A DNA stretch of 63,851 nt, filler included, from Octopus bimaculoides (Eukaryota): the NCBI RefSeq assembly GCF_001194135.2. It is 4 parts of 4 records of this genome, joined end to end, with 100 filler letters (N's around TTAATTAATTAA, not from the genome) between each part and the next. Parts side by side here need not be neighbours in the genome. Positions count along the whole stretch, not along the records: positions 1 to 30,078 come from NC_069005.1; 3 more parts are not named here. One strand, given 5' to 3'. The translations under genes were made by a program, and so were the position numbers. Every line of letters begins with the position of its first letter. The first letter of the stretch is position 1. The notes under the pieces were generated by a model. That model was not told the origin of the DNA. It searched no databases and was given only the letters and a program-made list of their open reading frames with translations. Below, piece after piece: positions 21,405 to 21,945 of the stretch.

Positions 21405-21856
21405 TTTCGGAATGATAGGAAGAGCCGACATCGAAGGTTCACAAAGCGACGTCGCTGCGAATGCTTGGCGGCTGCAAGAAAGTGGTAACTCTTCTGACAT
21501 CGCTCGGTGGACGGATAGCTGGCTGCTGTTCAGAAAGGATCGATGGGCCACGCTTTCGCGGCTTGTGTTCATCCTGAGAGTTGAGATCGAGCAAGCTTTT
21601 GCCCTTTTGCTCAATGTGTGGTCTTCATCCACGCTGAGCTCACTTTGGGACACTTGCGTGACCGTTTGACAGACGAACCGCTCAAGTCAGTCTGCCCGAC
21701 CGACACGGTTCACAAATGAGGGTCGAGCATTGGTTGCGTCGATGCCCGAATAGGCGCTCGCCATGCACCGCGTGCTTCTCACCAGATAATGAGACACCGC
21801 CTTTATCCATCGAGTGAGCGAGGAAACTACGGAAGTGACGATTTTTCATCATCGCA
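21405..21856 (-). rRNA. 28S: Isolated, highly diverged 28S (LSU) rRNA fragment covering domain V; probably pseudogenic
   Basis: The plus strand shows the reverse complement of conserved LSU blocks in the correct order: aatgataggaagagccgacatcgaagg, gtggtaactcttctgaca, aaggatcgatgggccacgctttc, gcaagcttttgcccttttgctc, ctgagctcactttgggacacttgcgtgaccgtttgacag, gtgagcgaggaaactac. The GGGATAAC block is missing and the P-loop is altered. Confidence 0.9.
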
Positions 21857-21945
21857 AACGGGTGCGACACCCCGACGACGAACTGGCCACCCGACGAGTT
21901 GGGTTCTCACGTCGAGTTGGGTTCGGTGCTCACTGAGGACACGTA

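What the first reader, a model, noticed from the sequence alone, without database searches (positions are those of the whole stretch)
21405..21945. Orphan, deeply diverged 28S rRNA fragment with structural covariation but a destroyed peptidyl-transferase centre
Seen: a ~450-bp GC-rich island between (TA)n and (TAA)n tracts is collinear with LSU domain V on the minus strand. On the sense strand, GAGTTACCAC is followed directly by TTTCTTGCAGCCGCCAAGC, so the universally conserved AGGGATAACTGG block is gone. The P-loop reads GACTTGAGCGG instead of GACTGGGGCGG. Some helices nevertheless keep pairing through swapped bases: GTGG-atgaaga-CCAC where the canonical pair is GAGG/CCTC, plus an intact CGC-GAAA-GCG hairpin. 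Established: GGGAUAAC contains the A2451-equivalent, the P-loop Gs (G2251/G2252) pair with the tRNA CCA end, and cephalopod rRNAs are fast-evolving. Inference: the copy came from a functional but unusual rRNA and then decayed. The donor could be host rDNA, a cryptic divergent paralogue, or a parasite/symbiont.
Basis: partly seen in the sequence, partly recalled or inferred. Interest (0 to 1): 0.7.

Follow-up and report, generated by a model that had tools for sequence, protein, structure and literature searches.

The report
Old decayed 28S rRNA pseudogene fragment
A stray piece of about 545 bp of a cephalopod-type large-subunit ribosomal RNA gene sits alone in octopus-like DNA and has since decayed at the neutral rate, so it is an ordinary rRNA pseudogene and not a relic of an exotic ribosome or a parasite.

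Summary
Window 21394-21938 (minus strand) is a GC-rich island, and it is the only rRNA match in the window (Rfam LSU_rRNA_eukarya, 111 bits, E 5e-26). It covers part of 28S domain V. Nine bases of the peptidyl-transferase block (ACAGGGAUA) are deleted, and two P-loop guanines are changed.

A real cuttlefish 28S (Sepia pharaonis, L011) is the closest reference: 79% identity against 70-76% for other eukaryotes. The fragment shares 7 of the 8 informative Sepia-specific states at sites otherwise invariant in four distant eukaryotes. The host is octopod-like: a mariner remnant in the window best matches Octopus vulgaris.

Decay looks neutral. 15% of five-way invariant sites are substituted. 22.5% of base pairs are broken, as a neutral simulation predicts. 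The fold is no more stable than shuffled sequence. The "covariation" is ordinary lineage difference in variable helices plus about the one or two double hits that chance gives.

I found no sibling copy, no significant target-site duplication and no adjacent rDNA. How the piece was inserted (RNA-mediated or DNA capture) cannot be decided from this window.

Verdict: a new member of a known kind, of low interest.

The parts
21394..21938 (-). Whole GC-rich island: the ectopic 28S-derived segment (about 545 bp, GC 0.545, CpG o/e 1.19) inside AT-rich, microsatellite-dense DNA.
   Evidence: composition. (Rfam LSU_rRNA_eukarya, E 4.7e-26 and 1.4e-31).
21406..21848 (-). Part with robust homology to cephalopod 28S: from UGAAAUACC (H78 side) through ES31, the P-loop helix H80, H81-H88 and the 5' half of the peptidyl-transferase ring, to CUAUCAUU-CGAA (Rfam model about 2490-2905).
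   Evidence: blastn against Sepia pharaonis 28S: 79% over 334 nt, plus 84% over 49 nt. Alignments.
21849..21938 (-). GC-rich 5' portion of uncertain register. cmscan forces it onto H76-H77, but it is not similar to the Sepia sequence there. It is probably derived from the large cephalopod expansion segment that precedes H78. It contains a 15-nt near-duplicate (21892-21906 / 21910-21924).
   Evidence: low posterior, many non-standard pairs. Sepia has about 290 nt of expansion here, and the local alignment is not significant (56/500 shuffles reach it)..
21476..21489 (-). Peptidyl-transferase-centre lesion: 9 nt (ACAGGGAUA, holding the A2451 equivalent) deleted between 21484 and 21483. The following ACUGGC is changed to ACUUUC (21480, 21479).
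21678..21686 (-). P-loop remnant: CUUGAGCGG in place of CUGGGGCGG (G>U at 21684, G>A at 21682).
   Evidence: The motif is intact in Sepia.
21305..21384 (.). Context only: (TC)n(TA)n microsatellite abutting the 3' (rRNA-sense) edge. Not evidence of a retroposon tail, because the window holds about one microsatellite per 300 bp.
   Evidence: 95 TRF rows in about 25 kb of called bases.
21412..21669 (+). Antisense 85-aa ORF. It is the decayed counterpart of the well-known spurious antisense-28S ORF (annotated elsewhere as 'senescence-associated protein' or RRT15). It is not a gene. I used it as a handle to fetch real 28S sequences.

Best explanation
The island is a dead, isolated copy of an internal piece of the host lineage's own (cephalopod-type) 28S rRNA gene.

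It runs from the expansion segment before H78, through the P-loop, to just past the 5' half of the peptidyl-transferase ring. It was inserted outside the rDNA and has had no function since. It has accumulated substitutions, small indels and one short tandem duplication at the neutral rate. That decay destroyed the P-loop and the GGGAUAAC block along with everything else.

Shown:
- Identity as eukaryotic LSU.
- Isolation within the window.
- Cephalopod affinity.
- Decay that is blind to structure.

Inferred:
- That the donor was the octopod's own rDNA or rRNA.
- That the copy is tens of millions of years old. The Jukes-Cantor distance is about 0.17 at invariant sites. That is about twice the per-copy divergence of the mariner remnant nearby.
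- The mode of insertion, which is left open: reverse transcription of an rRNA fragment by a LINE enzyme, or capture of rDNA at a break.
For: (1) Identity. There is a single LSU_rRNA_eukarya match, E 4.7e-26, and nothing else rRNA-like in the window. There is no other similarity to a cephalopod rDNA stretch.

(2) Host context.
- The mariner-like ORF at 16927-17418 best matches an Octopus vulgaris protein, at 82%.
- Interspersed repeats are shared with an O. vulgaris chromosome piece.
- The island lies in an N-free block, 19710-23364.

(3) Donor.
- The fragment is 79% identical to Sepia pharaonis 28S over 334 nt. It is 84% identical over a further 49 nt of a variable region. Four other eukaryotic 28S give 70-76%.
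- At columns invariant in those four, the fragment shares 7 Sepia-derived states, against 1 Sepia-only state.

(4) Non-function.
- Real 28S scores about 1 bit per model position. The fragment scores about 0.25.
- The P-loop and the peptidyl-transferase block are destroyed.

(5) Neutral decay.
- 31 of 201 five-way-invariant sites are changed, and G>A and C>T lead against Sepia.
- Conserved paired and unpaired sites match the consensus equally often (0.70 vs 0.69).
- 27 of 120 pairs (22.5%) are non-standard. A neutral simulation gives 22.8% at p=0.20 and 17.6% at p=0.15.
- Of 78 pairs that are standard in Sepia, 12 are broken.
- The fold energy has z = -0.73 against shuffles.
Against: - No octopod 28S could be fetched. 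A decapod (Sepia) stands in for the host, so lineage difference and decay cannot be fully separated.
- Six two-sided compensated differences against Sepia is more than the roughly one that neutral decay alone predicts. I attribute the excess to functional octopod-decapod divergence, and that is untested.
- The 5' 90 nt cannot be placed on any reference.
- CpG is not depleted (o/e 1.19) and the island is still 54% GC in a 33-36% GC setting. That is slightly surprising for a very old neutral insert.
- Copy number in the genome is unknown.
Confidence: 0.85

Rival explanations
1. The fragment is one member of a dispersed rRNA-derived retroposed family (SINE28-like), or the rRNA part of a chimeric LINE insertion made by template switching during target-primed reverse transcription. 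On this reading it is a product of retroelement activity, not a one-off capture.
For: - 28S fragments of 50-482 nt fused to LINE-1, and 28S pseudogenes made by LINE machinery, are documented in mammals (PMC13174262).
- A SINE derived from 28S exists (PMC4994717).
- Simple-repeat tracts that could be element tails lie nearby: (TA)n at the edge, and (TAA)n at 22178-22244 and 20719-20791.
- This rival concerns only the mode of origin. It is compatible with the best explanation.
Against: - There is no second copy of the fragment or its flanks in the window or in 20 kb of O. vulgaris.
- The exhaustive protein search with the antisense ORF found 18 hits among 1.84 billion representatives. The best were 49-60% identical over most of the ORF, and none was a sibling.
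- The deletion junction is absent from the metagenome contigs.
- The candidate target-site duplication, ACACGTGT/ACACGTAT, arises by chance in 26% of shuffles.
- There is no tRNA-like head and no reverse-transcriptase remnant in the flanks.
- Microsatellites are so dense here that adjacency means nothing.
- The piece is internal, not the 3' end of 28S as in SINE28.
Confidence: 0.1
2. The donor was a foreign organism living in cephalopods (a dicyemid, Aggregata or another parasite or symbiont), and the piece entered the host genome by horizontal transfer.
For: - The deep divergence from the eukaryote consensus first suggested a fast-evolving donor.
- No dicyemid or apicomplexan LSU was available here for direct comparison.
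Against: - The fragment shares 7 of 8 informative cephalopod-specific states at otherwise invariant sites.
- Its best match is a cuttlefish 28S, and the match extends into variable regions.
- The early apparent excess of AT>GC changes, which hinted at a different donor, is explained by these cephalopod states: 6 of the 7 are AT>GC.
Confidence: 0.02
3. It is a remnant of, or a member of, a cryptic divergent rDNA paralogue that is or recently was expressed as a variant rRNA.
For: - Some helices keep pairing through two-sided changes: 19 against the consensus and 6 against Sepia.
Against: - No functional LSU can lack the P-loop guanines and the A2451 block (established knowledge; lesions shown).
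- Only about 545 nt of a gene longer than 3.4 kb is present, with no collinear neighbours.
- Pairs break at the neutral rate.
- The fold is no more stable than shuffled sequence.
Confidence: 0.02
4. It is an assembly artefact or contaminant read joined into a host scaffold.
For: - The scaffold is a gapped draft: 11 N runs make up 16% of the window.
Against: - A contaminating organism's rRNA would be intact. This sequence is a pseudogene, so it must reside in some genome.
- It lies inside a 3.6-kb N-free block. Host-type microsatellites sit on both sides. A SINE-like repeat also found in O. vulgaris lies about 900 bp away.
Confidence: 0.02

Closest known systems
Dispersed rRNA pseudogenes / rDNA orphons (for example the LSU-rRNA fragments masked in animal genomes; rRNA pseudogenes reviewed for fungi in PMC5555474)
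   Same: Partial rRNA gene copy outside the array. It has escaped concerted evolution, lost universally conserved residues and is decaying neutrally.
   Different: Nothing essential. This copy is older and more decayed than most reported orphons (15% at invariant sites), and it is an internal 28S piece rather than a unit-sized copy.
[quoted passage not shown]
   Same: Size class (50-482 nt there, about 545 nt here). An internal 28S fragment inserted at a non-rDNA site.
   Different: No LINE sequence, target-site duplication or tail could be shown here. The mammalian hotspot (human 28S 3636-4115) is mostly upstream of the region copied here (my estimate from known landmark positions, not computed).
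SINE28, a 28S-derived SINE of mammals (PMC4994717)
   Same: A genomic element derived from LSU rRNA.
   Different: SINE28 derives from the 3' end of 28S, is transcribed by RNA polymerase III and is multi-copy. This piece ends at least 450 model positions before the 3' end, and no second copy was found.
Truncated 28S copies next to R2 retrotransposons inside rDNA (seen here in Sepia pharaonis, L011)
   Same: A partial 28S 3' portion in a cephalopod genome.
   Different: The Sepia copy starts exactly at the R2 site (CTCTTAAGG|TAGCC), is 95% identical to the neighbouring full gene and lies in rDNA. The octopus fragment starts elsewhere, has no reverse-transcriptase neighbour and is far more decayed.

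Membership tests
Functional eukaryotic LSU (28S) rRNA gene | Full-length, collinear domains I-VI | tested here: not met
   Only model positions about 2411-2920 of 3401 are matched. Nothing is collinear on either side.
Functional eukaryotic LSU (28S) rRNA gene | Intact P-loop guanines and peptidyl-transferase block GGGAUAAC | tested here: not met
   CUGGGGCGG reads CUUGAGCGG, and ACAGGGAUA is deleted. Both are intact in Sepia 28S.
Functional eukaryotic LSU (28S) rRNA gene | Helices kept (a few percent non-standard pairs at most); score near 1 bit per model position | tested here: not met
   22.5% of pairs are non-standard. The score is about 0.25 bit per position, against about 1.0 for real genes.
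rRNA pseudogene / rDNA orphon | Significant homology to an rRNA gene | tested here: met
   E 4.7e-26. 79% identity to Sepia 28S, E 3e-78.
rRNA pseudogene / rDNA orphon | Located outside an rDNA unit | tested here: met
   No 18S, 5.8S or other 28S part in 30 kb. The flanks are unrelated to cephalopod rDNA. Limit: N gaps hide 16% of the window.
rRNA pseudogene / rDNA orphon | Derived from the host lineage's own rDNA | tested here: met
   7 of 8 informative derived states are shared with a cuttlefish 28S, and the best identity is to it. An octopod 28S itself was not available, so Sepia serves as proxy.
rRNA pseudogene / rDNA orphon | Substitution pattern blind to function and structure | tested here: met
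   Conserved paired and unpaired sites are equally hit. The broken-pair fraction equals the neutral simulation. Fold z = -0.73.
SINE28-like rRNA-derived SINE | [quoted passage not shown] | tested here: not met
   The fragment ends near model position 2920 of 3401.
SINE28-like rRNA-derived SINE | Multi-copy with shared ends | tested here: inconclusive
   No copy in the window, in 20 kb of O. vulgaris, among 1.84 billion protein representatives or in the metagenome contigs. The host genome itself could not be searched.
SINE28-like rRNA-derived SINE | RNA polymerase III transcription | not testable with these tools
   Needs expression data.
LINE-mediated chimeric / retroposed insertion | Target-site duplication flanking the insert | tested here: not met
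   The best candidate is a 7/8 match, ACACGTGT (21386-21393) / ACACGTAT (21939-21946). An equal or better match occurs in 26% of shuffles.
LINE-mediated chimeric / retroposed insertion | Contiguous LINE 3' sequence and tail | tested here: inconclusive
   No reverse-transcriptase or other coding remnant in the flanks. The nearby simple repeats are uninformative in this microsatellite-dense DNA. No library of octopod repeats was on hand.

The most novel reading that the evidence does not exclude
The fragment could be one surviving member of an octopod-specific family of retroposed 28S domain-V pieces. Such a family would be an invertebrate counterpart of the mammalian 28S/LINE chimeras or SINE28. 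Alternatively, the locus could be conserved across octopods because the rRNA-like RNA has been put to some use. Neither reading is excluded, because the host genome and orthologous loci could not be searched.
Probability: 0.06. Interest if true: 0.35.

Novelty: new member of a known kind. Interest (0 to 1): 0.1.

Why it matters
It matters little for biology. Dispersed rRNA pseudogene fragments are common in animal genomes.

It has three practical uses:
- Such copies can be mistaken for contaminants, parasites or 'divergent paralogues' in rDNA barcoding and contamination screens. This case shows how to tell them apart: lesions at universally conserved sites, neutral pair loss, and lineage-specific states shared with the host clade.
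- Because its ancestor is under strong constraint and easy to reconstruct, the fragment could serve as a small yardstick for the neutral substitution spectrum in octopod DNA.
- It is a reminder that the antisense-28S ORF keeps being annotated as a protein.

Tried and rejected
(1) Unusual or foreign donor. The early comparison with four non-cephalopod 28S showed 20% change at invariant sites, with AT>GC changes outnumbering GC>AT. That argued against in-situ decay in AT-rich DNA. It dissolved once a cephalopod 28S was found: 6 of the 7 shared cephalopod states are AT>GC, and against Sepia the leading classes are G>A and C>T.

(2) ADAR-type hyper-editing of an RNA intermediate. Both A>G and T>C occur on the same strand, with no clean strand signature. 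Rejected after (1).

(3) Target-site duplication ACACGT(G/A)T. Not significant.

(4) A shared 5' boundary with other partial 28S copies (L006-L010 and Sepia copy B all 'start' at model position 2389/2390). This is an effect of how the covariance model begins local alignments. The Sepia copy really starts at the R2 site. The metagenome copies lose clear homology near model position 2500, by eye.

(5) Orthologous locus. The O. vulgaris piece fetched through the mariner hit (L005) is a paralogous transposon copy, not the orthologue.

(6) Exact look-up of the window's ORFs in public assemblies: not on record.

(7) Sibling copies.
- Word-indexed protein searches returned only ordinary 28S antisense ORFs.
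- The exhaustive search did the same.
- A metagenome scan for the deletion junction found nothing.

(8) Pfam scan of the antisense ORF and the mariner remnant: no family.

(9) Literature search for cephalopod rRNA pseudogenes or mollusc rDNA orphons: nothing specific.

(10) Clustering of changes. The runs test gave z = -3.5, but it was driven by the 9-nt deletion and one poorly aligned stretch. I do not read it as evidence of constraint.

Full report
**What is there.**
The piece (1-30078) is AT-rich, at about 33-36% GC. N runs make up 16% of it, and microsatellites are very dense: 95 Tandem Repeats Finder rows. Inside an N-free block (19710-23364) lies one GC-rich island, 21394-21938 (GC 0.545).

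Rfam finds one family above threshold in the whole piece. It is LSU_rRNA_eukarya on the minus strand, 21485-21918, 111.3 bits, E 4.7e-26. With laxer filters on the local region the match runs on to about 21400, at 126.9 bits. A permissive scan of the whole piece (E<=1e-3) adds no other rRNA. It adds only sub-threshold microsatellite-driven miRNA-family matches and two weak sub-threshold snoRNA-family matches.

**How diverged it is.**
Real 28S pieces score about one bit per model position:
- L001, L003 and L004: 1219-1403 bits.
- Sepia 28S: 455 bits over model positions 2478-2947.

I fetched those pieces through the antisense ORF that the fragment still carries. The fragment itself scores about a quarter of a bit per position.

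Its 3' 300 nt are 69-75% identical to four unrelated eukaryotic 28S, which are 79-89% identical to one another. Because any working 28S must keep the universal core, this already excludes a recent orphon.

**Who the donor was.**
The host is octopod-like. A mariner-type transposase remnant (16927-17418) has an Octopus vulgaris protein as its best hit, at 82%. Interspersed repeats of the window recur in an O. vulgaris chromosome piece.

The exhaustive protein search with the antisense ORF, followed by a cluster look-up, turned up an annotated 'protein' of the cuttlefish Acanthosepion (Sepia) pharaonis. Its contig piece, L011, holds a genuine 28S: 1856 bits, with the P-loop and GGGAUAAC intact.

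Against it the fragment is:
- 79% identical over 334 nt.
- 84% identical over a further 49 nt in a variable region.

That is better than against any non-cephalopod reference.

At columns invariant in the four other eukaryotes:
- The fragment shares seven of Sepia's departures.
- One departure is Sepia-only.
- Three columns show three states.

Six of the seven shared states are AT>GC. This explains the puzzling excess of AT>GC changes in my first comparison. The donor was therefore a cephalopod-type 28S, most simply the host's own. An octopod 28S itself could not be obtained, so Sepia is a proxy.

**Is there a sign of function or of special covariation?**
No.
- After removing the cephalopod states, 31 of 201 five-way-invariant sites (15.4%) are changed, plus the 9-nt deletion. 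Against Sepia the commonest changes are G>A (18) and C>T (11), the usual decay classes.
- Conserved consensus positions match equally often whether paired or unpaired (0.70 vs 0.69).
- On the cmscan alignment 27 of 120 ungapped pairs (22.5%) are non-standard. A simulation of structure-blind substitution gives 17.6% at p=0.15 and 22.8% at p=0.20.
- Of 78 pairs that are standard in Sepia: 50 are unchanged, 10 are changed on one side and kept, 11 are changed on one side and broken, 6 are changed on both sides and kept, and 1 is changed on both sides and broken.
- The six compensated differences exceed the roughly one expected from decay alone. Three of them lie in the ES31 hairpins. This is what functional divergence between octopod and decapod 28S would leave. 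That attribution is inference.
The same 3' strand occurs in another eukaryote (L003).
- The CGC-GAAA-GCG hairpin is simply unchanged consensus.
- The island folds no better than shuffled sequence (z = -0.73).

**Ends and mode of insertion.**
The 3' end (rRNA sense) falls between model positions about 2905 and 2955. The last 20 nt can be aligned in two ways.

The 5' 90 nt are GC-rich but match neither the canonical H76-H77 sequence nor the roughly 290-nt Sepia expansion segment significantly. They probably come from the octopod version of that segment. They carry a 15-nt near-duplicate.

On the mode of insertion:
- A candidate target-site duplication is not significant (P = 0.26).
- There is no tRNA-like head.
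- There is no coding remnant in the flanks.
- There is no other similarity to cephalopod rDNA.
- There is no second copy in the window.

Reverse transcription of 28S fragments by LINE enzymes is documented in mammals (PMC13174262; SINE28, PMC4994717). It is a plausible origin here, but nothing in the window decides between that and DNA capture.

**Age.**
A Jukes-Cantor distance of about 0.17 at invariant sites is roughly twice the per-copy divergence implied by the mariner remnant. That remnant is 83.6% identical to a paralogous O. vulgaris copy, so about 8% per copy under a star phylogeny. The fragment predates that transposon burst. An absolute date needs a cephalopod neutral rate, which I do not have.

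**Rivals.**
- Foreign donor: contradicted by the cephalopod-specific states.
- Expressed divergent paralogue: contradicted by the lesions, the isolation and the neutral loss of pairs.
- Contaminant or misassembly: a live organism's rRNA would be intact, and the island sits in continuous host-type sequence.
- Retroposed family: not excluded, but no sibling was found among 1.84 billion protein representatives, in the metagenome contigs or in the small amount of octopod DNA on hand.

**Verdict.**
This is an ordinary, old, host-derived 28S pseudogene fragment: a new member of a known kind, of low interest. The decisive checks are alignment to the host's 45S unit, a genome-wide copy search, and inspection of the orthologous site in other octopods.

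Noticed in passing
window 22494-22577: Near-perfect palindrome: arms GGAGATTAGGAGAGGATGCTTAT / ATAAGCATCCTCTCCTAATCTC around a TA/CATA-rich loop. It gives sub-threshold hits to several miRNA precursor families (best mir-3688, 51.7 bits against a gathering score of 84). It could be a small inverted-repeat element or a hairpin built on a microsatellite.
   Followed up: no
window 16884-17418 (-): Remnant of a mariner/Tc1-like transposase. The best protein hit is a 'hypothetical predicted protein' of Octopus vulgaris (82%). It is 83.6% nucleotide-identical to a paralogous copy on O. vulgaris chromosome OX597814.1. No Pfam family reaches threshold.
   Followed up: partly
window 20359-20522 and 2051-2252: A SINE-like interspersed repeat next to (AAT)n/(ATT)n tracts. 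There are two copies in the window and several in the 20-kb O. vulgaris piece L005.
   Followed up: no
L011 (Sepia pharaonis CAHIKZ030000355.1) 9826-14377: A non-LTR retrotransposon joins a truncated 28S copy exactly at the canonical R2 target CTCTTAAGG|TAGCC. The element has an RVT_1 domain. By eye, it also has a C-terminal cysteine motif and a KPDLVI motif of the restriction-like endonuclease type. The truncated copy is 95% identical to the full 28S 6 kb away. It looks like an R2 element in cuttlefish rDNA.
   Followed up: partly
L006-L010 (JGI metagenome contigs): Five contigs from four samples carry the 3' roughly 0.9 kb of a eukaryotic 28S. At least two of them (L006, L008) join it to the same AT-rich non-rRNA upstream sequence. 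They carry their own lesions: P-loop GACTGTGGCGG in L008, and GGGACAAC in L006. This looks like a repeated 28S-derived pseudogene family in an unidentified eukaryote.
   Followed up: partly
window 21892-21906 and 21910-21924: A 15-nt near-duplicate inside the fragment (CGACGAGTTGGGTTC / CGTCGAGTTGGGTTC, 18 nt apart). It is probably a small tandem duplication that arose after insertion.
   Followed up: no
proteins P0003, P0016, P0017, P0020, P0028: Public annotations all translate the antisense strand of 28S domain V, so they are annotation artefacts. Examples: 'senescence-associated protein', 'Regulator of rDNA transcription protein 15' (Pfam PF27657 RRT15), and unnamed products of Sepia pharaonis and Biomphalaria glabrata.
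   Followed up: partly
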